DNA from: Scyliorhinus canicula
Taxonomy: Eukaryota
Reading direction: 5' to 3'
Length of the DNA stretch: 64,000 bases
Assembly (NCBI RefSeq): GCF_902713615.1
Contig: NC_052153.1
Span: 53,112,763 to 53,176,762, forward strand
Shown: in pieces, positions 803 to 11,539 of the stretch
Layout of the letters: each line of letters begins with the position of its first letter
Position numbering within the stretch: the stretch's first letter is position 1
Program-made: the position numbers and the translations under genes
Notes under the pieces: model-generated
What the model saw: the letters and a program-made list of their open reading frames with translations, nothing else
Told to the model about the DNA's origin: nothing
The model's database searches: none

Positions 803-1135
803 ATTGAAACTAGGACATTTTTGGTACGTGTTGTGCAGTACCACACTACACACAGTGGACATTTATCAATAGAACATCAGAAATATCCTTAATTTTAAAC
901 ATGTGAACACAGGAACAAAGAATGATAGCAATTGTCCCGTTTGTAAAATGATTGTGACAAGTGAGTTAAATACATTTTACCTTGAATTAATTTGAACAGT
1001 TTCTTAGTTATAGAAGTGTTCTAAAACAATTACTTCTATTCTTGATCTTCATTTTAGACAGAAATCCTACAACGCACAACAGAAATGATCACCTAAAACT
1101 GCATTTACAAACAAATTTAAACTGATGACAGTTAC

Positions 1136-1200
1136 CTGTCTATGCAAATTGTATTCATACTATCGATTCGCATGTATAGCATCTCCGTGGCTTGTGCAAG
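1136..1200 (-). CDS. NCBP1: NCBP1 exon 12 (LAQATEMLYMRIDSMNTICIDR), 65 nt; gene continues left of the window
   Basis: tcag|CTT...AG|gtaac. No exon 13 found in 1-1135. Confidence 0.96.
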
Positions 1201-1999
1201 CTGAGATTTACCAGTTAAGCAAAACATGAAACATGTTTATCAGAAAATTACAATTACAAAGGACAATTACAAGGGAAATTTTTCATGCAGCAGGTGGCTA
1301 GGATCTGGGATGCACTGTCTGAGATTCTGGTGTAGGCAGATTCAGTCGTAGCTTTCAATGGGGAATTGAATAATATTTCAATAGAAAGCATTTGCAGGGC
1401 TTAGGGGAAAAAAGGTGAGGAATGGGACTAGCTGACTTATTCTTGTAGAGAGCCAGCATGGACAAGACACGCTTATTCTAAGCGTACCAATTTGTGAAGA
1501 GAAAACTTAAGGTCCCACAATCGCAGACAGAGATTACTCTCAGCAGCTATTATCGGGCGAGTGAGTCAATAATTTCCACTTTTAAAACAGATTTGTGTGT
1601 GTTTGTACCAGTAAGTTCCTCATACTATACAGCAATCCAGCATTCAATGAGACCTATAATAAGGAGAGTGTCCAATTGAGCTTCATTTGTATGACAACTT
1701 ATCATGCCTCAGAGTCATCTCAAAGTGCTTCACAGGATTTGAAGCTCAAGCAGTTCAAAGAGTCAAAACCAAAAGCAGTGGAAAGCTAGCAAGAAGCATT
1801 TCAAAGCATTTCTCTGCTTTTGGGTCAAGAGAAAACCTACCCAAAAAGAATAATGAAAACAATCCACATAACTTATGAACATTATTAAACAGACAGGAAG
1901 GCATTTGATATTGGAAATACTCTCCTCTTATGCTTACTCCTGAGTTGTTAGCATTGAGTAAATGGTTCTTTCAAATAACTAACATTGCCAAAAGGATAC
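1201..1999 (-). other. NCBP1: U12-type (minor spliceosome) GT-AG intron 11 of NCBP1
   Basis: 5' site GTATCCTTTT; branch-like TTGCTTAAC at 1222-1214, 13 nt before the exon; no polypyrimidine tract. Confidence 0.9.
1270..1475 (+). mobile_element. Old CR1 LINE 3' fragment inside the U12 intron
   Basis: Degenerate CR1 ORF2 end and 3'UTR (ttttcatgcagcaggtgg...ggatgcactg...gggactagctg). Confidence 0.6.
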
Positions 2000-2110
2000 C
2001 ACTTGTGGTAAAGAGCCAGGCTGCAGCTTGCAGAGTTCGATCAACAGTGTTGTATACATGACCTCAATATGAGGGGGTAAGGGCAACTGGAAAAGTTCTC
2101 CGAAGACAAC
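2000..2110 (-). CDS. NCBP1: NCBP1 exon 11 ([37 protein letters not shown]), 111 nt
   Basis: gtag|GTT...GTG|gtatcctttt (U12-type donor). Confidence 0.97.
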
Positions 2111-2494
2111 CTACACAAACAATCATTAACATTATTGAAAAAACACTTGTAATTTACTGGAAGTGAACAGAAATACATATTCAACTGCATAAATGTGTTT
2201 ATAGAATCACAATTACCCCACCCCATCTTGTAGTCTTAGAAACTCTAGTTCCTTAGCAAAAGCATCATTGGCAAAACTGTCAATCAATAGATGCTAAAAT
2301 GTCAGTTTTGTTTTGTAATGTGTATACATACACTGAGGCGCTTTAACACATAAAAGCTGCACCACATTAGCCAAGTGGACCAAGGCTTTCTAACAAGTAT
2401 GTACCACTGAAATGATAAACAAAATCATGCTGAAGGAACTAGGGGAATCTCTTCCTAAAACCTAACACTATTAAAATATGGTCTGAATATAAAC

Positions 2495-3500
2495 TATAGA
2501 ATAGAATGTAGAGGACAGTCGGAGACCATTTAGCTCATTGTGGCTCTTTGGTAGAGCTATCCACCAGTCCCACTCCCTTCCTCCTTCCCTATTAACACTG
2601 CAATTGCTTTCATTTAGAAATTCATCCAATCCCCTTTAGAAAGTTACTTTGAATCCTCTTCCTGCACCTTTCAGGCACGGCATTCCAGATCACAATACCT
2701 CAGCATAAAAAGAGAGATTTCCTCATGTGACCCCGGCTTCTTTTGTCAATCACTTTAAATGTGTTTCATCTGGTTACTGACCCTTCTGTCACAGGATATA
2801 GTTTTTCCTTATTTGACCATGACTCTTCCATGATTTTAAACATCACTTTCAAATTGCCTCTTTAGCTTCTCGGTTCCAAGGAGAACACCAGTTTCTCAAG
2901 CCATCCCACAGAACTTAAGTCTTCCATCTTTAGTATCATTCTGGTAAATCTCTTCTGCATCCTCTCCAAGACCACACTGTATGTCCTTCCTAAAAGTGTG
3001 GTGGCCAGATTTGAAAATAATACTCCTGCTGAGGTTTAATCAATGATTCATAAAGATTTAGCATAGCCTCCTCATTGTTGTACTCTATTCCTCTATTAAT
3101 AAAGCCGAGAATCCATATGCTTTAAAAAAAAAAAAACAGCCTTCTCTGCTTGTCTGCTGCCTTCAAAGATTTGTGTGCCTACTTCAGCTCTCTTTGATGA
3201 AAATGTGCTGTTTAGTCTGATACTATCCTCCTCATTTATAACTACAGTTGTGGTATTTGCAAACTTTAATGTACTGTATATACAAGTCCAGTTCATTAAT
3301 TTATGTCAAAAAGAGCAGTGATCCCAAAACCAAACACTGGGAATACAACAGCACACTTCGCTACAGTTCAATAAACAACAGTTCTCTGCTTTCTGTCCTT
3401 TTAACCAATTTTGTGCCCCTCCTTCCACTGTACCTTAAATCTCTTGGGTTTTTCTTTCAGCAACGAATCAGCATACATTCAGCATGTCTGAGGCTTTATC
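2495..3500 (-). mobile_element. Old CR1 LINE 3' fragment
   Basis: Minus-strand tail (atagaatagaatgtag...ccatttagctc) followed by degenerate RT C-terminal sequence. Confidence 0.65.
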
Positions 3501-3699
3501 CAGCATTAGGTCATTGGAAAGGTTTCTTTCTAACATATAGCTTATCTTGAACAGCTCACACAATCTCTAGTTCAGTAAAGTGAATTTAAAAAAAAATATT
3601 TTTAACTTCACTTCTATCGGTCTAATTTTCTATACTTTGGAATCAAGTCTCCAGTAAGATAAAATGTGAGTTACCAACTTTCATTAAAAAGGAACACAC

Positions 3700-3763
3700 C
3701 TCCACTATATGGTAATTCAGAGGAATCTTGTTTTTTCCAGGATAGCTAAGCAGCTGTGCAGCA
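3700..3763 (-). CDS. NCBP1: NCBP1 exon 10 (AAQLLSYPGKNKIPLNYHIVE), 64 nt
   Basis: acag|T...GAG|gtgtgt; phase consistent. Confidence 0.96.
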
Positions 3764-4194
3764 CTGTCAGAGAGAAGAAAATCAGCCAAGGGAATTTAAG
3801 GCAAAACAATAGAAATGTAAATTACAAATGTCACAGAATTACATTCAGAATCTCGACTATGAAGCTGAAATATGTCAGTGGCCCCCAGAAAATGAAGAGT
3901 TTACATTCTTTCACAGACCAAATTTAACAATTCAGTCTTAACATACTTCATCAAGTCTGCAATTTCAATACCAAGATCAATCACTAAACGTTAAAGAACA
4001 ATCTTAAGATAAAGGACCATTGCCAACGGCAACTTAAATTGATCGAGGTCCCAATAGTTAGCAGACAAACCCACAAATTATTTTAAGAATTTTTGCTTTC
4101 TCTTCCCATTTCCTTATCAAATTCGGCTGCTTCAACAGTAACCTTCCCTCCATCATAAGATCAGAATGTTCACTGGTATTTGCAAAGTGTTCAG

Positions 4195-5360
4195 TCCCAT
4201 TTGCGACTCTTCAGATACTGAAGCATGTCTATGTCCATATGCAACAAGACCTGAACAACATTCAGGCTTTGGCTAATAAATAGCAAGTGATATTAACATC
4301 CTTTAAGTGTCAGGGAATAACCCTCTTCAACAAGGGCAAATCTTACCATTGTCCCTTCACATTCAATGGCATTTATATTGTTGAATTCCCCGACTATCAA
4401 TATCCTTGGGATTACCGTTGACCACAAACTAATCTGAACCAACCATACAAATGCTGCGGCTATTTTTATTTAGGGGAAGGGTTCACCAGTCTGGAGGAGC
4501 TAAGGGAGAGGGTAGAGCTGCCGATGGGGAGTGAGTTCAGGTACCTGCAGTTTAGGGATTTTGCGTGAAAGGTCTGGAGGGGGTTTGCTAGGTTGCCAGG
4601 ATACACCCTGCTGGAGCGACTACTGCTCCGGATGTGGAAGGGGAGGGAAGAATTGTTGATATATACAAGTGGCTGGGGAGCAGGGAGGTGAAGATCAAAG
4701 AGAAATGGGAAGCGGAGTTGGGAAGGGAGATCAATTGGGGACTATCGAGTAAGGCACTGCCACGGGTAAACGGGACCTCCTCTTGTGCAAGGATGAGCCT
4801 GATACAGTTTAAGGTGGTGTACAGGTGCATATGACTCGGGCGAGAATGAGTGGGTTCTTTCAAGGGGTAGCAAGAGTGCGAGAGTGTGTGTGGGTGGGGG
4901 CCAGCGAATCAAGCACATGTTTTGGGGTTGCGAAAAATTGGGAAAATTCTAGGCGGGAGTGTTCGCGGTCTTAGCCAGGGTAGTGGAGGAGGAGGTGGAC
5001 CCGGAATCTTTGATGGCGATATTTGGGGTTTCAGAGAAGCCAGAGCTCATGGAGAGGAGGAAGGCCGATGCCGTGGCCTTCGCCTCTCTGATTGCATGGC
5101 AGCAAATCTTGCTGGAGTGGCCGGCGGCATCGCCACCGGGGGTAGCGGCATGGTTGGGTGATCTGTATGACTTCCTGCAGTTAGAGAAGATAACGTACAA
5201 GTTAATAGGCTCAGCAGGGGAGTTTGAGAAAAGGTGGGGGATGTTCCATCTACAAGATGCACTGCAGCTACTTCCACCACCTTCTTGATGGTAATTAGTA
5301 TGAGCAACAAATTGTGGCCTTGCCAGTGGCGTTCATATGCCAGGAAGGAATTTTTAAAAA
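4195..5360 (+). mobile_element. Second CR1-clade LINE fragment interrupted by an L1 ORF2 3' piece (about 4465-5245)
   Basis: Flanks resemble the LINE at 47770-48610 and 53335-54360. The insert translates to L1 C-terminal motifs (SSCARMSLIQFKV, AFASLIA, LEKI). Confidence 0.75.
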
Positions 5361-5531
5361 TACTAGCTATTTCCAGCATTTCTAATTGTTAACTATATTT
5401 ATGGTAATTTATATACACACACACAACCATATGCTTACACAAAACTTAAATTTAATCTGATAATATACCCCCCCCCCCCCCCCCCCCCCCAATAAAATGT
5501 TACTGCAGTACTGAAACAAAGCAGACGTTAC

Positions 5532-5629
5532 CATGTCTTTCTTTCCTTCCAATGAGATTTGATGATGTATTGCAGATTCTCCTCAATTACATATCTCTCA
5601 ACAGAGTGACTACCAGGCATTACTGGGCC
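5532..5629 (-). CDS. NCBP1: NCBP1 exon 9 (GPVMPGSHSVERYVIEENLQYIIKSHWKERKTC), 98 nt
   Basis: ttag|GGC...TG|gtaac; translated by hand. Confidence 0.97.
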
Positions 5630-5777: not shown

Positions 5778-7586
5778 GTTCAGGAAGAAGACAAAGACAA
5801 CGTTGTCGAGGAGAATACTGAAATACAGGCTACTAGACTAGAAGGGCTTGAGGTACACAAGGAGGTGGTGTTAGCGATTCTGGAAAGTGTTAAAATAGAT
5901 AAGTACCCTGGGCCGGATGGGATTTATCCTAGGATTCTCTGGGAAGCTAGGGAGGATATTGCTGAGCCTTTGGTTTTAATCTTTAAGTCATCTTTGTCTC
6001 CAGGAATAGTGCCAGAAGACTGGAGGATAGCAAATGTTGTCCCCTTGTTCAAGAAGGGGAGTAGAGATAACCACGGTAACTATAGACCAGTGAGCCTTAC
6101 TTCTGTTGTGGGAAAAGTCTTGGAAAAGTTTATAAGAGATAGGATGCATAATCATCTGGAAAGGAATAATTTGATTAGAGATAGTCAACATGGTTTTGTG
6201 AAGGGTAGGTCGTGCCTCACAAACCTTATTCAGTTCTTCGAGGTGGTGACCAAATAGGTGGATGAGGGTAAAGCAGTTGATGTGGTGTATATGGATTTCA
6301 GTAATGCGTTTGATAACGTTCCCCATGGTAGGCTATTGCAGAAAATACAGAGGCATGGGATTCAGGGTGATTTAGCAGTTTGGATCAGAAATTGGCTAGC
6401 TGATAGAAGACAAAGGGTGGTGGTTGATGGGAAATGTTCAGACTGGTGTCCAGTTACTAGTGGTGTACCACAAGGATCTGTTTTGGGGCAGCTACTGTTT
6501 GTCATTTTAATAAATGATCTGGAGGAGGGCGTAGAAGGATGGGTGAGTAAATTTGCAGATGACACTAAAGTCGGTGGAGTTGTGGACAGTGCAGAAGGAT
6601 GTTACAAGTTACAGAGGGACATAGATAAGCTGCAGAGCTGGGCTGACAGGTGGCAAATGGAGTTTAATGCAGAAAAGTGTGAGGTGATTCATTTTGGAAG
6701 GAATAACAGGAAGACAGAGTACTGGGCTAATGGTAAGATTCTTGGTGTTGTGGATGAGCAAAGAGATCTCGGTGTCTATGTCCATAGATCCCTGAAAGTT
6801 GCCACCCAGGTTGAGAGGGTTGTTAAGAAGGTGTACGGTGTGTTAGCTTTTATTGGTAGAGGAATTGAGTTTCAGAGCCTTGAGGTCATGTTGCAGTTGT
6901 GCAAAACTCTGGTGCGGCCGCATTTGGAGTATTGCATGCAATTCTGGTCGCCGCATTATAGGAAGGATGTGGAAGCATTGGAAAGGGTACAGAGGAGATT
7001 TACCAGGATGTTGCCTGGTATGGAGGGAAGATCTTACGAGGAAAGGCTGAGGGACTTGAGGCTGTTTTCGTTAGAGAGAAGGTTAAGAAGTGACTTAATT
7101 GATGCATACAAGATGATCAGAGGGTTAGATAGGGTGGTCATTGAGAGCCTTTTTCCTCGGATGGTGAGGGGAGATAGATATAGGACAGATGTCAGAGGTA
7201 GGTTCTTTACTCAAAGAGAGTAGCAAGGGCGTGGAATGCCCTGCCTGCAACAGTAGTGGACTCGCCAACACTAAACGCATTCAAATGGTCATTGGATAGG
7301 CATATGGACGATAAGGGAATAGTCTAGATGGGCTCAGAGAGTAGTAATTGCGTGGAATGCCCTGCCTGCAACAGTAGTGGACTCACCAACACTAAACGCA
7401 TTCAAATAGTCATTGGATAGGCATATGGACGATAAGGGAATAGTGTAGATGGGCTTTAGAGGGGTTTCACAGGTCGGCGCAATATCGAGGGCCGAAGGGC
7501 CTGTACTGCGCTGTAATGTTCTATGGTTCGGCACAACATCGTGGGCCGAAGGGCCTGTTCTGTGCTGTATTGTTCTATGTTCTATG
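5778..7586 (+). mobile_element. 5'-truncated HER1-like CR1 LINE (RT domain); internal stop at 6255-6257
   Basis: ORFs 5727..6257 and 6258..7223: [33 protein letters not shown]. 3' tail gggccgaagggcctg...(ttctatg)n. Confidence 0.95.
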
Positions 7587-8767
7587 GTCAATAAAACTGC
7601 AAACCTACAAACTGATCAGCTTCAACAGATAGAAAGTATTTTGCATCCCCGACACATTTCAGTCTATCAAGATTGACTACAAAGTAATATATTCCAATAA
7701 TGGAAGCAATCCAATGGCAGAAATGATCAATGGCAAGATTTTAAGTATACAAAACTAGTATAGTAAACAAAATAAAACTAAGAAGTTAAAAGAATAATTC
7801 AAAAAGACAATTTTAAATGAGTGAAGTCAGGCAAAATGCAACACCATCAGTGTTGCAATTCGTGCCTGGAATCAGACAGTATACCTGGACACAAGTGACA
7901 TATGTATTTTAAATGTAAGCACATCGGGTGAATTGACAATTTTCAAATAAATATGCATTTCCCTTTTACAAACTGTTATCAAGGATGAGAAATGTCCATC
8001 GTTTGGCAGATTTCTGACACCGGTCCTTCAGAAATCCAATTCATTCAATCAGGAGATGTGGCCAGTATTGTGGGTGGGACCGACCCTCAAGTGAGAATTT
8101 TTTAAACCAGCGCACATAGATTGAAGAATTATGAATGACCTGAACATAATTTGTGCTTAAAATTCCCAAATCTTCTGTGCTGTTTTAGCCCATTTAGGCA
8201 AATAGCACACCTGGAGGAAACTCCTGCCCAAAGAATTTTTACCAAGGAAAGTCAATCACTGCAAAAGGTTAGAAAGACCATGTATCCTGTGAGATTGTCC
8301 CAAATGTATCCATGGCAAAGGATTAAATTAAAATTATAAATCCTTTGCTGACAGCAAGACGATCTTCACTTGTTAATCATGAAAAGTTAAATTTACCAGA
8401 TATAACAACTGCAAAGGAAATACTCTGTTTTTATCTAGGAGCAGAGAAAAGGCCATAAATACAAAAGGAGGAGGGGTGAAGATCATCTAGTTCCACAAGC
8501 CATTTATTACAAGCAGTGCCCAGTTTACTGGAAATTTATAGCACTTTTTTATAATGTGGTGAAACGCAAATATTTCTAGGCCAAGGCCACTTCAAATGGA
8601 TGCAATTGTAAAAGTACCACGAGATCAGTAGTTACTTACACCTCACAAAAGATCCAATTATCCAATTGAGAAGTTTAAAATTATTGGAAAGTTAGGCTAT
8701 TATGCTTGCACTGAGATTTTTGCACCTAAATGTCATATTTAAGCATAATATAATTTACTGACAACAT

Positions 8768-8812
8768 GATGTGAAGTTGCCGGCGTTGGACTGGGGTGAG
8801 CACAATAAGAGT
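8768..8812 (-). mobile_element. Penelope-like terminal fragment
   Basis: Reverse complement of the tgtgctcaccccagtccaacgccggca terminus at 14819-14846. Confidence 0.6.
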
Positions 8813-9407
8813 ACTGACAACAGTTCACTCCATATTTTGAAATAGTGAAAGCGGGAAGGGGGCGGATAAAGGAGACAACTACTGTAAAGATACTATGCAA
8901 TTACACAAGAGTGCTCCTGGTACATGCACAAACCACCCCTTAAATTCAATCTCCCCCTTCAAATTAAAGCCAAGTCCTCGATGAATTCAAATAATTTTAG
9001 GAATTTGGATTTGTCTATCAAAGAACACACTTTGGTTTGCTAGAGTCAAATGTTCAGCCAGCAATAATAGCTATTATAAGATGATTATTTTTATAGAATT
9101 TTACATCTGTACACTATACAGGGGTGGGTGTTTAAGGCGGGTTCCCCTCTCCCATCCTTGCTGCTCCTCCAGTCTAGATTCTGTTTCTGGAGCAGCAAAA
9201 GCTGAAATGTGACAACCTGTGATTGGACGAGTTGGCGAAGCCAGCGTGGGAGAGACATAATCTATGATTGGAGGAACAGCTCTGTCTCTCCCATGCTTGT
9301 TGCTCCCCCAATCACAACTCTGCAGTCAGTCCCCGCTCTGACAGTTGTGATTTTGTAAAGTCCCGTAGCAGGACTGCCCGCTAAATCCTGACCTCCTTGG
9401 CAGCCGG

Positions 9408-9791
9408 CCTTTCTTTTTCGGTTAGCTGCTGGTGGTGGAGGAGGAGTCCGCAGGAGATCAGGTAAGAGTCATGGCCAAGTCCAAGAATCACACCAACCAC
9501 AATCAGCCCAGCAAGTGGCACAGGACAGGGATCAAAAAGCCCAAGTCTTATTGGTTTGAACCCCTGAAAGGAGATGATCCCAAGTTCCTGAGAAACATGC
9601 GGTTTGCCAAAAAACACAACAAAAAAAGATCAGCTAAGGCTCAAAGCAAAAAATAAAGTTGTGATCACGAAGAAAAGGACTGGCAGTGTTGACGATTTAA
9701 CATTTACTGTCCTTGAAGATGGCAGCCATGTGATATCTTGTATTCCAAATTATTTATTTTGAATAAAATCTAATTGGGACTTTAGAAAAAA
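9408..9791 (+). pseudogene. RPL29: Processed RPL29 (eL29) retrocopy, ORF 9471-9656 open, antisense within NCBP1 intron 8
   Basis: [12 protein letters not shown]...GIKKP...[17 protein letters not shown]. Intronless, with a TOP-like CCTTTCTTTTTC at 9408, AATAAA at 9762-9767 and a short A-run at 9786-9791. Several normally invariant residues are changed. Confidence 0.9.
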
Positions 9792-10970
9792 GCCCCATAC
9801 CAGCCCCGAAGAGCAGAACATATATTTAAAATAATGGATTTCTGAAGGACCAGTGTCAGAAATCTGCCAAACGATGGACATTTCTCATCCTTGATAACAG
9901 TTTGTAAAAGGGAAATGCATATTTATTTGAAACGGGCACAGAGAAAAAGCAGGCAATAGGGACTAAATGGATGGCTCTGTTAGGAGAATTGGGTCAAGTG
10001 CTATGGGGGAAGTATACGACATTCTGATTCTGAGCCACAATCTCGCTACTTGTAGTCCTGCCATCACTTTTCTACTTCCATAATATAGCACACAAGTTAT
10101 ACTGAGATTTTACAATGTACTGTTAAAATTACACTTCGAATTCTATCTTCAGTTTGGGTTCCAGTGCCACAAAAAAAACAAGAGCACAGAAAAGAGCAAA
10201 ACTGGTTCTGAAAGCAAAGATAACGGCAAATGAGCCAGGATTGGCAAAGTTCACTTTCTTTCTATACTGTGAAGCTTCTGACTTCTGTTTGAAATAATTT
10301 ACCAAGCTAGCTAATAACAGTAACATTATTGGGACTATTCAAAATAGGACAGTTGGTGTATGAGGGACTGCAAGTCAATGATATTTTGCCATCCAAGATC
10401 GGTGTTGTCTGTCTTAAACCATGGCACCCATCACTGAAGTAGCACATTAACAAGGAACCAGAGCAACAGCTGCATTTCCCCCTCTATCATTTCCTAACAA
10501 TTAATTTGACAGCACATCCTGGCTCCATTAATCAGTGTCTTACGCAGAAATAACCCCATCAATTTGATTTGAGAGAGAAGACTGTTACATGTCACAAAAA
10601 GGACAAATTATCTTTCCTTAAGGTTGAGTTAAGTGCTTGTAAGATTGTCCGCATTCAAACTAACCATTAAAAGTCAATTACTCTAACCAAGCTAAGAAAT
10701 GAATCTACGTGAAGTGGGAAACAGAAAATTCAATTCATTTTTGAGTTGCGAGTGGCTGATTACATATTAAATATTTACTGTTTTTGATATCCAATTTGTT
10801 TGTCCTAGCATTTATATATCCAATGTCTTGTATTTATGGCATATGTTTAACATAGAAAGAAGTCCCAAGGTATGTCACAGAGGCACAATCAGATTTGAGG
10901 AAAAAAAACATTTAGTAACTAATACTTATCACTAGATGACCACTCAGCCAAAATGAACATTACTGCATAC

Positions 10971-11186
10971 CTCAGGGGCATCTGTATAGTCAAACATCCT
11001 GAAAATGACTCGTGGCACAGGATACATGGAGTCCTTTGTGTGAGGAGGTGGGGTGAAAGGTGGCAAGTTATGTTGCAACGCCTCACAGAGTACGCTGTCA
11101 AAAGCCAAGTATGGTCTTAAGATGTGTTTCTCCTGCCAACGATCCTTTTTCATCTTCTGAATTTGGGCCCAAAGGCAGTCCAAGTA
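10971..11186 (-). CDS. NCBP1: NCBP1 exon 8 ([17 protein letters not shown]...[11 protein letters not shown]), 216 nt
   Basis: acag|TAC...GAG|gtatg; ORF track 10944..11201. Confidence 0.97.
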
Positions 11187-11539
11187 CTGTAAAGAAATCA
11201 TTGTCCTTTAATATGGTGATAAATTAGGCTTTGATCAGTCATTCATTCATACATTGAAATGTAATATTTGCAACTTTGAAACTTTTCTATTGCATTTATT
11301 CTAACAATTATAAACAAGGTTAAAATCATTGTCAAAATGAGACAGTATAAATGGTGCAGGAGGGTGTAGCAAGTTAACAGATAGCACTGAACAATCTGAC
11401 AAAGGAATTTAACCACTAGAGACAAGAATTTTAAATCGCATTGTGAGATCAGGAGTCAATGTAGGTCAGCAAGTACAGGAGTAATAGATGAATGGGTAAT
11501 CTACAGATACATTAGTTTTAAATGAACTGAAGTTTAGGA

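What the first reader, a model, noticed from the sequence alone, without database searches (positions are those of the whole stretch)
7941..9932. RPL29 retrocopy enclosed by a 98-bp near-perfect inverted repeat: Pack-type element or templated insertion
Seen: 7941-8038 and 9835-9932 are reverse complements at 97/98 positions and enclose 1.8 kb containing a promoter-like module and a complete processed RPL29. The right arm starts about 45 bp after the retrocopy's A-run and abuts what looks like a truncated CR1 3'UTR. Each arm ends internally in its own hairpin (GATTTCTGA-10nt-TCAGAAATC). The arm matches no other repeat in the window and no TSD is visible. Inference, three options: (a) TIRs of a non-autonomous DNA transposon carrying a captured retrogene; (b) a recent local template-switch duplication; (c) in either case a 98-bp dsRNA stem in NCBP1 pre-mRNA that loops out the antisense ribosomal-protein sequence.
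Basis: partly seen in the sequence, partly recalled or inferred. Interest (0 to 1): 0.7.

Follow-up and report, generated by a model that had tools for sequence, protein, structure and literature searches.

The report
Young inverted copy beside old pseudogene
A 98-base stretch in an intron of a catshark NCBP1 gene was copied backwards 1.8 kb upstream fairly recently, by chance bracketing a much older dead RPL29 copy; it looks like an ordinary DNA-copying scar, not a transposon.

Summary
Positions 7941-8038 and 9835-9932 are reverse complements at 97/98; the one mismatch is a CpG transition. Each arm carries the 9-bp/10-nt hairpin, no TSD is visible, and the arm has no other copy in the window. 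Short-read contigs from two samples of the species support both junctions of the left arm, so a mis-join is unlikely.

The enclosed RPL29 is an intact 61-codon processed copy. It is silent in the one RNA run examined, and every listed coding difference from the expressed parent changes an amino acid.

The key evidence comes from a sister species about 4.1% diverged. It has the interior, the RPL29 copy, the right arm and the right flank in the same order. Its contigs leave the window's sequence at 7936 and at 8038, within a few bases of the left arm's two boundaries.

So the right arm is ancestral and the left arm is a lineage-specific inverted copy that replaced other sequence. This fits option (b), a template-switch or templated-repair event. 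The Pack-type transposon reading fails on TSD, family and empty-site tests. The dsRNA stem is physically plausible but untested. The scan noted similar scars elsewhere in this genome. This is a known kind of mutation, of low to moderate interest.

The parts
7941..8038 (.). Left arm: the derived, lineage-specific inverted copy of 9835-9932.
   Evidence: It matches the reverse complement of the right arm at 97/98. Both junctions are supported in two samples of the species (X1 records 1 and 2, X2 record 9). In the sister species the contigs stop matching at 7936 and 8038 and run on for 466 and 180 nt of unlike sequence.
9835..9932 (.). Right arm: the ancestral template segment.
   Evidence: Sister-species contig record 22 runs colinearly from 9719 through the arm to 10790. 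X1 record 6 covers 9698-9882.
8009..8036 (.). Small palindrome (9-bp stem, 10-nt loop) at the inner end of the left arm. Its mirror is at 9837-9864.
   Evidence: The single arm-to-arm mismatch (8021/9852) lies in its loop.
9340..9815 (+). RPL29 processed-pseudogene block: 5'UTR with a TOP tract at 9409-9419, ORF 9471-9656, AATAAA at 9762, A-run at 9786-9791. It is older than the arm pair.
   Evidence: Pfam PF01779. The ORF is 87% identical to functional shark RPL29. Parent mRNA reads lie colinearly and carry the other letter at all 13 listed diagnostic sites, so none came from this copy. Other genomic contigs join 9339-9344 to 9816-9817 or 9854 without the block. The sister species shares both edges of the block.
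9089..9339 (.). The 'promoter-like module': a dispersed repeat with an internal inverted repeat (9160-9188 / 9251-9280).
   Evidence: Summed contig depth is about 10 times baseline in species A and about 16 times in species B.
8039..8755 (.). Ordinary single-copy intron DNA forming the left half of the enclosed segment.
   Evidence: Depth is near baseline in both species. Sister-species records 18 and 19 align at about 3% divergence.
8756..8822 (+). A 45-nt SINE-head fragment (8767-8811) flanked by 11-nt direct repeats. It is absent from the sister species.
   Evidence: Joint 8755->8812 with 11 shared letters in X9. The direct repeats are at 8756-8766 and 8812-8822. Depth there is about 3x10^5.
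10968..11192 (-). NCBP1 (CBP80) exon, residues about 227-299. It is the upstream exon of the host intron.
   Evidence: PDB search, E 9e-45 to CBP80 chains.
5531..5629 (-). NCBP1 exon, residues about 300-331. It is the downstream exon of the host intron.
   Evidence: PDB search, E 6e-14, contiguous residue numbering with the exon above.

Best explanation
The right arm (9835-9932) is resident intron sequence that both species share. After the two species split, one event in the window's lineage wrote a reverse-complement copy of those 98 bases 1.8 kb upstream, in place of other sequence. I infer that a polymerase switched template during replication or break repair. This corresponds to type 1-4-3-2 of the four-point template-switch model, at FoSTeS/MMBIR-like range. 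Copying may have ended just after crossing the small palindrome at 9837-9864. The 1.8 kb between the arms is ordinary intron DNA plus an older silent RPL29 processed pseudogene lying in a dispersed repeat. Its enclosure is incidental. The pair would form a 97-bp duplex in the NCBP1 pre-mRNA, but nothing indicates a selected function. Shown: the repeat, its reality in two samples, the shared right side and interior, and the break at both left-arm boundaries in the relative. Inferred: the direction of change (there is no outgroup) and the enzymology.
For: The arms match at 97/98 and the one mismatch is a CpG transition. In species A, contigs from two samples cross both left-arm junctions with no mismatch; X2 record 9 spans 7788-8798. 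In species B (run X9), record 22 is colinear from 9719 to 10790 through the right arm, and record 19 covers 8382-9481. Record 17 stops matching at 7936 and runs on for 466 nt of unlike sequence. Record 18 stops at 8038 and runs on for 180 nt. No joint connects 7936 to any other place in the stretch. A-B divergence over five unambiguous pieces is 98/2403 = 4.1%. Arms that had diverged independently since before the split should differ at 4 or more sites; P(1 or fewer) is 0.09. There is no TSD. The left interior is single-copy in both species. The mutation class is documented in PMC5453318. Earlier scan notes report similar scars in this genome; I did not test those.
Against: With only two lineages the polarity is not proven. 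The sister species could have lost the arm. I could not read the unlike sequence in the sister species, so replacement versus two independent insertions at one site stays open, and microhomology at the switch points cannot be judged. From the window alone, neither junction shows microhomology. A 98-nt copy made from 1.8 kb away is larger and more distant than typical short-range template switches. Other genomic contigs join the module to arm-proximal sequence (9816+, and one from 9854), so the right arm is at least partly dispersed-repeat sequence. That keeps a transposon-related origin alive. The identity argument alone is weak (P about 0.09).
Confidence: 0.62

Rival explanations
1. Transposon-related origin. 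Either the arms are the TIRs of a non-autonomous (Pack-type) DNA transposon carrying RPL29, or the left arm is a separate fragment of the same dispersed family that happens to lie inverted.
For: The repeat is long and near-perfect. The module next to the right arm is a dispersed repeat, and other genomic copies join it to arm-proximal sequence. About one extra diverged arm-like contig appears in each species.
Against: There is no TSD. 8039-8660 is single-copy, orthologous intron DNA in both species, so no 2-kb family exists. The sister species has the interior and right arm without the left arm, so the unit did not insert as a whole. The RPL29 block predates the arm pair. A fresh family insertion should differ from an old resident copy at several sites, not one. 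No hammerhead or other Rfam signal was found.
Confidence: 0.18
2. The inverted repeat is ancestral. The sister species lost its left arm by deletion plus insertion, and the arms in this species have been kept alike by gene conversion.
For: Polarity is unproven without an outgroup. Inverted repeats are known to be unstable.
Against: It needs a loss in the sister species whose ends coincide with both arm boundaries, within 5 nt on the outer side and exactly on the inner side. It also needs efficient conversion between 98-bp tracts 1.8 kb apart. Without conversion, 4 or more differences are expected and 1 is seen.
Confidence: 0.08
3. The arm pair is a selected pre-mRNA stem (dsRNA) that loops out the antisense RPL29 sequence or regulates NCBP1 splicing or editing.
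For: The predicted duplex has -173.8 kcal/mol, and 97 arm-arm pairs form in the MFE of the 2.07-kb transcript. Both arms lie in one intron.
Against: The left arm is absent from a sister species only 4% diverged, so the stem is not conserved. No RNA reads lay on the arms, so there is no editing evidence. The looped-out pseudogene is silent.
Confidence: 0.03
4. Assembly artefact: a mis-join or foldback chimera.
For: No single read or contig examined spans the whole 2-kb unit.
Against: De Bruijn contigs from two samples and studies cross the outer and inner junctions of the left arm with no mismatch. They break exactly where a two-copy 31-mer repeat predicts, at 7970, 7991 and 9882. A sister-species contig spans the right arm into the right flank.
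Confidence: 0.02

Closest known systems
Template-switch mutations (four-point model, type 1-4-3-2; Loytynoja & Goldman 2017, PMC5453318) and FoSTeS/MMBIR-type templated insertions
   Same: A segment is replaced by the reverse complement of nearby sequence. This creates a new inverted repeat while the source stays in place. The event is seen as a lineage-specific difference between close relatives.
   Different: The copied tract is 98 nt and the template lies 1.8 kb away, which is longer and more distant than the short-range events that model was built for. Microhomology at the switch points could not be assessed.
Pack-TIR / Pack-MULE elements (Tan et al. 2021, PMC8277862)
   Same: Inverted terminal sequences bracket a gene-derived fragment whose parent lies elsewhere.
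   Different: There is no TSD and no identifiable TIR transposon family. The bracketed DNA is mostly orthologous single-copy intron. The gene fragment arrived by retroposition before one of the 'TIRs' existed.
Ribosomal-protein processed pseudogenes
   Same: The copy is intronless with 5'UTR, CDS, 3'UTR, a poly(A) signal and an A-run. It is one of several RPL29 copies in the genome, is silent in the run examined, and carries amino-acid changes at otherwise invariant sites.
   Different: The ORF is still intact, which is unsurprising at 61 codons. The TSD is only a 12/15 candidate. The block carries about 30 nt beyond the mRNA on both sides, so it may be a secondary DNA copy of an earlier retrocopy.
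Other inverted-copy scars noted by this scan in the same genome (s1-207387: 92-bp inverted repeat about 1 kb apart in a VPS53 intron; s1-228643: 208-nt inverted copy from 12 kb away)
   Same: A near-perfect inverted copy of about 90-200 nt of nearby sequence within the same gene region.
   Different: These are different loci and sequences. I did not re-examine them, so they serve only as leads.

Membership tests
Pack-type / non-autonomous TIR DNA transposon | Terminal inverted repeats | tested here: met
   The arms match at 97/98.
Pack-type / non-autonomous TIR DNA transposon | Target-site duplication flanking the TIRs | tested here: not met
   The best flank match is 6 nt and not adjacent to the arms. 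It is reached by 213 of 500 shuffles.
Pack-type / non-autonomous TIR DNA transposon | TIRs belong to a recognisable multicopy TIR-transposon family | tested here: inconclusive
   There is no other copy in the window. Contig depth suggests only about one extra diverged arm-like copy per genome, and the left interior is single-copy. No genome-wide BLAST was available.
Pack-type / non-autonomous TIR DNA transposon | The whole unit is absent (empty site) at the orthologous place in a relative | tested here: not met
   The sister species has the interior, the RPL29 block and the right arm in place. Only the left arm is missing.
Template-switch / templated inverted insertion | The new segment is the reverse complement of a nearby retained source | tested here: met
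   The source is colinear in both species.
Template-switch / templated inverted insertion | A close relative lacks the copy, with breakpoints at the copy's boundaries | tested here: met
   X9 records 17 and 18 end at 7936 and 8038. Polarity is not fixed because there is no outgroup.
Template-switch / templated inverted insertion | Microhomology at the switch points | not testable with these tools
   This needs the ancestral sequence, which could not be read. None is visible from the window alone.
Template-switch / templated inverted insertion | Short range (tens to hundreds of bp), as in the short-range model | tested here: not met
   The template is 1.8 kb away. The event fits the longer-range FoSTeS/MMBIR class better.
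RPL29 processed pseudogene | Intronless copy colinear with the mature mRNA | tested here: met
   Parent mRNA reads lie without skips over about 9447-9752. The ORF matches PF01779.
RPL29 processed pseudogene | Poly(A) remnant and TSD | tested here: inconclusive
   AATAAA is at 9762 and an A6 run at 9786. The TSD candidate 9357-9371 / 9789-9803 matches at 12/15, which 60 of 500 shuffles reach.
RPL29 processed pseudogene | Not expressed and under relaxed constraint | tested here: met
   At all 13 listed diagnostic sites, every read (5 to 1541 per site) carries the parent's letter (one run only). The five listed CDS differences are all nonsynonymous.
Edited intronic dsRNA (ADAR substrate) | A-to-G clusters on both arms in RNA | not testable with these tools

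The most novel reading that the evidence does not exclude
This locus, together with the other 90-200-nt intragenic inverted copies noted by the scan in this catshark genome, may reflect a recurrent lineage-typical process rather than isolated accidents. One candidate is a LINE reverse transcriptase or repair polymerase jumping onto the host gene's own nascent pre-mRNA. The left arm's + strand equals the NCBP1 pre-mRNA sense sequence of the right-arm site. Such a process would seed long intronic dsRNA stems genome-wide.
Probability: 0.1. Interest if true: 0.55.

Novelty: new member of a known kind. Interest (0 to 1): 0.27.

Why it matters
The case shows that a striking 'TIR-flanked retrogene' can come from two unrelated events of different ages: an old retrocopy and a young inverted micro-duplication. 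It also shows that contigs from one sister species can separate the two. The locus is a clean, dated example of a longer-range inverted templated copy in a slowly evolving vertebrate genome. It creates a new 97-bp potential dsRNA stem in an essential gene's intron. That makes it useful raw material for studies of template switching and of how intronic hairpins arise. It reveals no new biology on its own.

Tried and rejected
1. Rfam scan of 7600-10400 at E up to 1 found only two chance-level hits, with no snoRNA or hammerhead, so the arm is not a known RNA gene or a Penelope pLTR.
2. A sensitive in-window BLAST of the right flank, module, arm and interior found no relatives. The 'CR1 3'UTR' label for the right flank is not supported within the window.
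3. Inversion by staggered breaks is rejected, because the junction between the interior and the right arm is colinear in the sister species.
4. Fold-back priming at the small palindrome is rejected as a simple model, because the arms are not centred on it.
5. A search for TIRs linking the module start to the arm end found only an internal module repeat.
6. P0002, a 92-aa RPL29-like gene model in Scyliorhinus canicula on another chromosome, could not be fetched because the file is too large.
7. The word 'RPL29' alone matched nothing.
8. I did not use the second sequencing-run run, because no further laying was possible.

Full report
**Observation**

The inverted repeat is real. Positions 7941-8038 match the reverse complement of 9835-9932 at 97 of 98 positions. 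The repeat finder extends the pair to 109 nt at 94%, but the extra 11 nt match at chance level. The single mismatch is 8021 C against 9852 A on the + strand, that is CCGG versus CTGG, a CpG transition.

- Each arm ends internally in the palindrome GATTTCTGA-N10-TCAGAAATC, at 8009-8036 and 9837-9864, with -8.8 kcal/mol as RNA.
- No other copy of the arm exists in the 64-kb window, even with a sensitive search.
- No TSD flanks the unit. The best flank match is a non-adjacent 6-mer that 213 of 500 shuffles reach.

**Host gene**

The minus strand encodes NCBP1/CBP80. The exon at 10968-11192 matches residues about 227-299 (E 9e-45). The exon at 5531-5629 matches residues about 300-331 (E 6e-14). 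The numbering is contiguous, so the whole unit lies in one intron of about 5.3 kb, and the RPL29 copy is antisense to the host.

**The enclosed RPL29**

The ORF at 9471-9656 encodes 61 residues and matches Pfam Ribosomal_L29e at E 5.8e-20. It is 87% identical to the 61-residue RPL29 of other sharks and 89% identical to an RPL29-like model in Scyliorhinus canicula.

- In an oligo-dT RNA run of the same species, reads pile up over about 9447-9752. At every one of the 13 listed diagnostic positions, all reads carry the other letter, for example 516/516 at 9552 and 1541/1541 at 9669.
- Those reads therefore come from the parent gene. This copy is silent in that sample.
- The five listed coding differences are all nonsynonymous and restore consensus residues in the parent: S13, R28, G53 and A54. 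That pattern fits a processed pseudogene whose short ORF has simply survived.
- Contig depth over the RPL29 part is several times baseline in both species, so there are several RPL29 copies.

**The 'promoter-like module'**

Summed contig depth over 9089-9302 is about 10 times baseline in species A and about 16 times in species B. Contigs in three runs join 9339-9344 directly to 9816-9817, or to 9854 with 26 letters between, without the RPL29 block.

- The module is therefore part of a dispersed repeat that continues into arm-proximal sequence.
- The RPL29 block (about 9340-9815) is an insertion into one copy of that repeat.
- A TSD candidate for the retrocopy (9357-9371 / 9789-9803, 12/15) sits in the right places, but 60 of 500 shuffles reach its score.
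- The claim that the right arm abuts a CR1 3'UTR is not supported by comparison with the CR1 copies in the window.

**Reality of the structure**

Logan contigs from two samples and studies of species A support the left arm.

- X1 record 1 covers 7591-7970 with no mismatch and stops 30 nt into the arm.
- X1 record 2 starts at 7991, which is 30 nt before the arm-specific mismatch.
- X1 record 6 ends at 9882, which is 30 nt after the mismatch on the other arm.
- X2 record 9 spans 7788-8798 with no mismatch, crossing the whole left arm.

These break points are what a two-copy repeat predicts for 31-mer graphs. A mis-join is unlikely.

**Sister species (the decisive comparison)**

Run X9 (species B) lies on the stretch at 98 substitutions over 2403 nt, or 4.1%, summed over five unambiguous pieces.

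- Record 19 covers 8382-9481, which includes the interior, the module and the 5' part of the RPL29 block.
- Record 22 covers 9719-10790, running colinearly from the RPL29 3'UTR through the right arm into the right flank.
- Record 17, a 1327-nt contig, matches 7602-7936 and then runs on for 466 nt that match nothing in the stretch.
- Record 18 matches 8377 down to 8038 and then runs on for 180 nt of unlike sequence.
- No joint connects 7936 to any other place in the stretch.

The interior, the RPL29 block and the right arm therefore predate the split. The left arm is missing in species B, and the breaks fall at its two boundaries.

The arms differ at 1 of 98 sites. Independently evolving arms older than the split should differ at 4 or more sites, and P(1 or fewer) is 0.09. 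That is suggestive on its own and is consistent with the contig evidence.

**Interpretation**

The most economical reading has three parts.

1. The right arm is resident sequence.
2. In the window's lineage a 98-nt reverse-complement copy of it was written 1.8 kb upstream, in place of other sequence.
3. The RPL29 pseudogene was enclosed by accident.

In the four-point template-switch description this is the 1-4-3-2 type that creates an inverted repeat (PMC5453318). The scale is closer to FoSTeS/MMBIR-type events.

If the + strand was being synthesised, copying ran from 9932 to 9835 and ended 2 nt after crossing the palindrome at 9837-9864. That palindrome could have promoted dissociation. This step is inference.

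Neither junction shows microhomology from the window alone. The proper test needs the ancestral sequence.

**Rivals**

- **Pack-type transposon.** This reading fails on the TSD, on the empty-site test and on the single-copy interior (criteria from PMC8277862). Because the right arm is at least partly dispersed-repeat sequence, a transposon-related origin of the left arm keeps about 0.18.
- **Ancestral repeat lost in species B.** This needs a deletion that matches both arm boundaries, plus gene conversion between 98-bp tracts.
- **Inversion by staggered breaks.** This is excluded by colinearity at the right arm.
- **Functional stem.** The duplex is strong, at -173.8 kcal/mol, and 97 arm-arm pairs form in the MFE of the 2.07-kb transcript. 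It is not conserved, and it could not be tested because no RNA reads lay on the arms.

**Context and limits**

Earlier scan notes describe similar inverted-copy scars in this genome, namely s1-207387 and s1-228643. I did not re-test them. They raise the possibility of a recurrent process but are not evidence for this locus.

Only one read-laying run was allowed, so three things could not be done. I could not read the unlike sequence in species B, examine an outgroup, or obtain genome-wide copy numbers from raw DNA reads.

Noticed in passing
window 8756-8822: A 45-nt fragment of the head of a very abundant SINE (depth about 3x10^5) is flanked by 11-nt direct repeats (TACTGACAACA) and is absent from the sister species. 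A head-only piece with a TSD-like repeat is not what target-primed reverse transcription normally leaves. It may be a second small templated insertion in the same 2-kb region.
   Followed up: partly
window 9089-9339: A CCAAT-rich 'module' is a dispersed repeat, roughly 10-17 copies by contig depth, with an internal 30-nt inverted repeat (9160-9188 / 9251-9280). Other genomic copies continue straight into sequence like 9816+. The family was not identified.
   Followed up: partly
window 9335-9815: A paralogous contig in species A (X2 record 12, 9335-9755, 5% different) shares sequence upstream of the TOP tract. The inserted block extends about 30 nt beyond the candidate TSDs on both sides. This RPL29 copy may be a secondary DNA-level copy of an earlier retrocopy.
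   Followed up: no
window 9389-9393: Three substitutions within 5 nt (9389, 9391, 9393) separate this copy from both the sister-species ortholog and paralogous contigs. This is a small mutation cluster in the window's lineage.
   Followed up: no
window 6600-7588: The 3' end of a CR1-like LINE on the + strand has its tail region tandemly duplicated: 120-nt units at 7215-7334 and 7336-7455 (95%), and 52-nt units at 7474-7525 and 7528-7579 (88%).
   Followed up: no
window 1135-5629 (minus strand): Open minus-strand segments at 3646-3795, 1982-2110 and 1135-1236 read like further NCBP1 exons. If so, the gene runs leftward through the window with multi-kb, repeat-rich introns. This rests on resemblance from memory and was not tested.
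   Followed up: partly
window 8491 and 10124: The sister species has a 17-nt and a 20-nt deletion relative to the window in otherwise colinear intron sequence.
   Followed up: no
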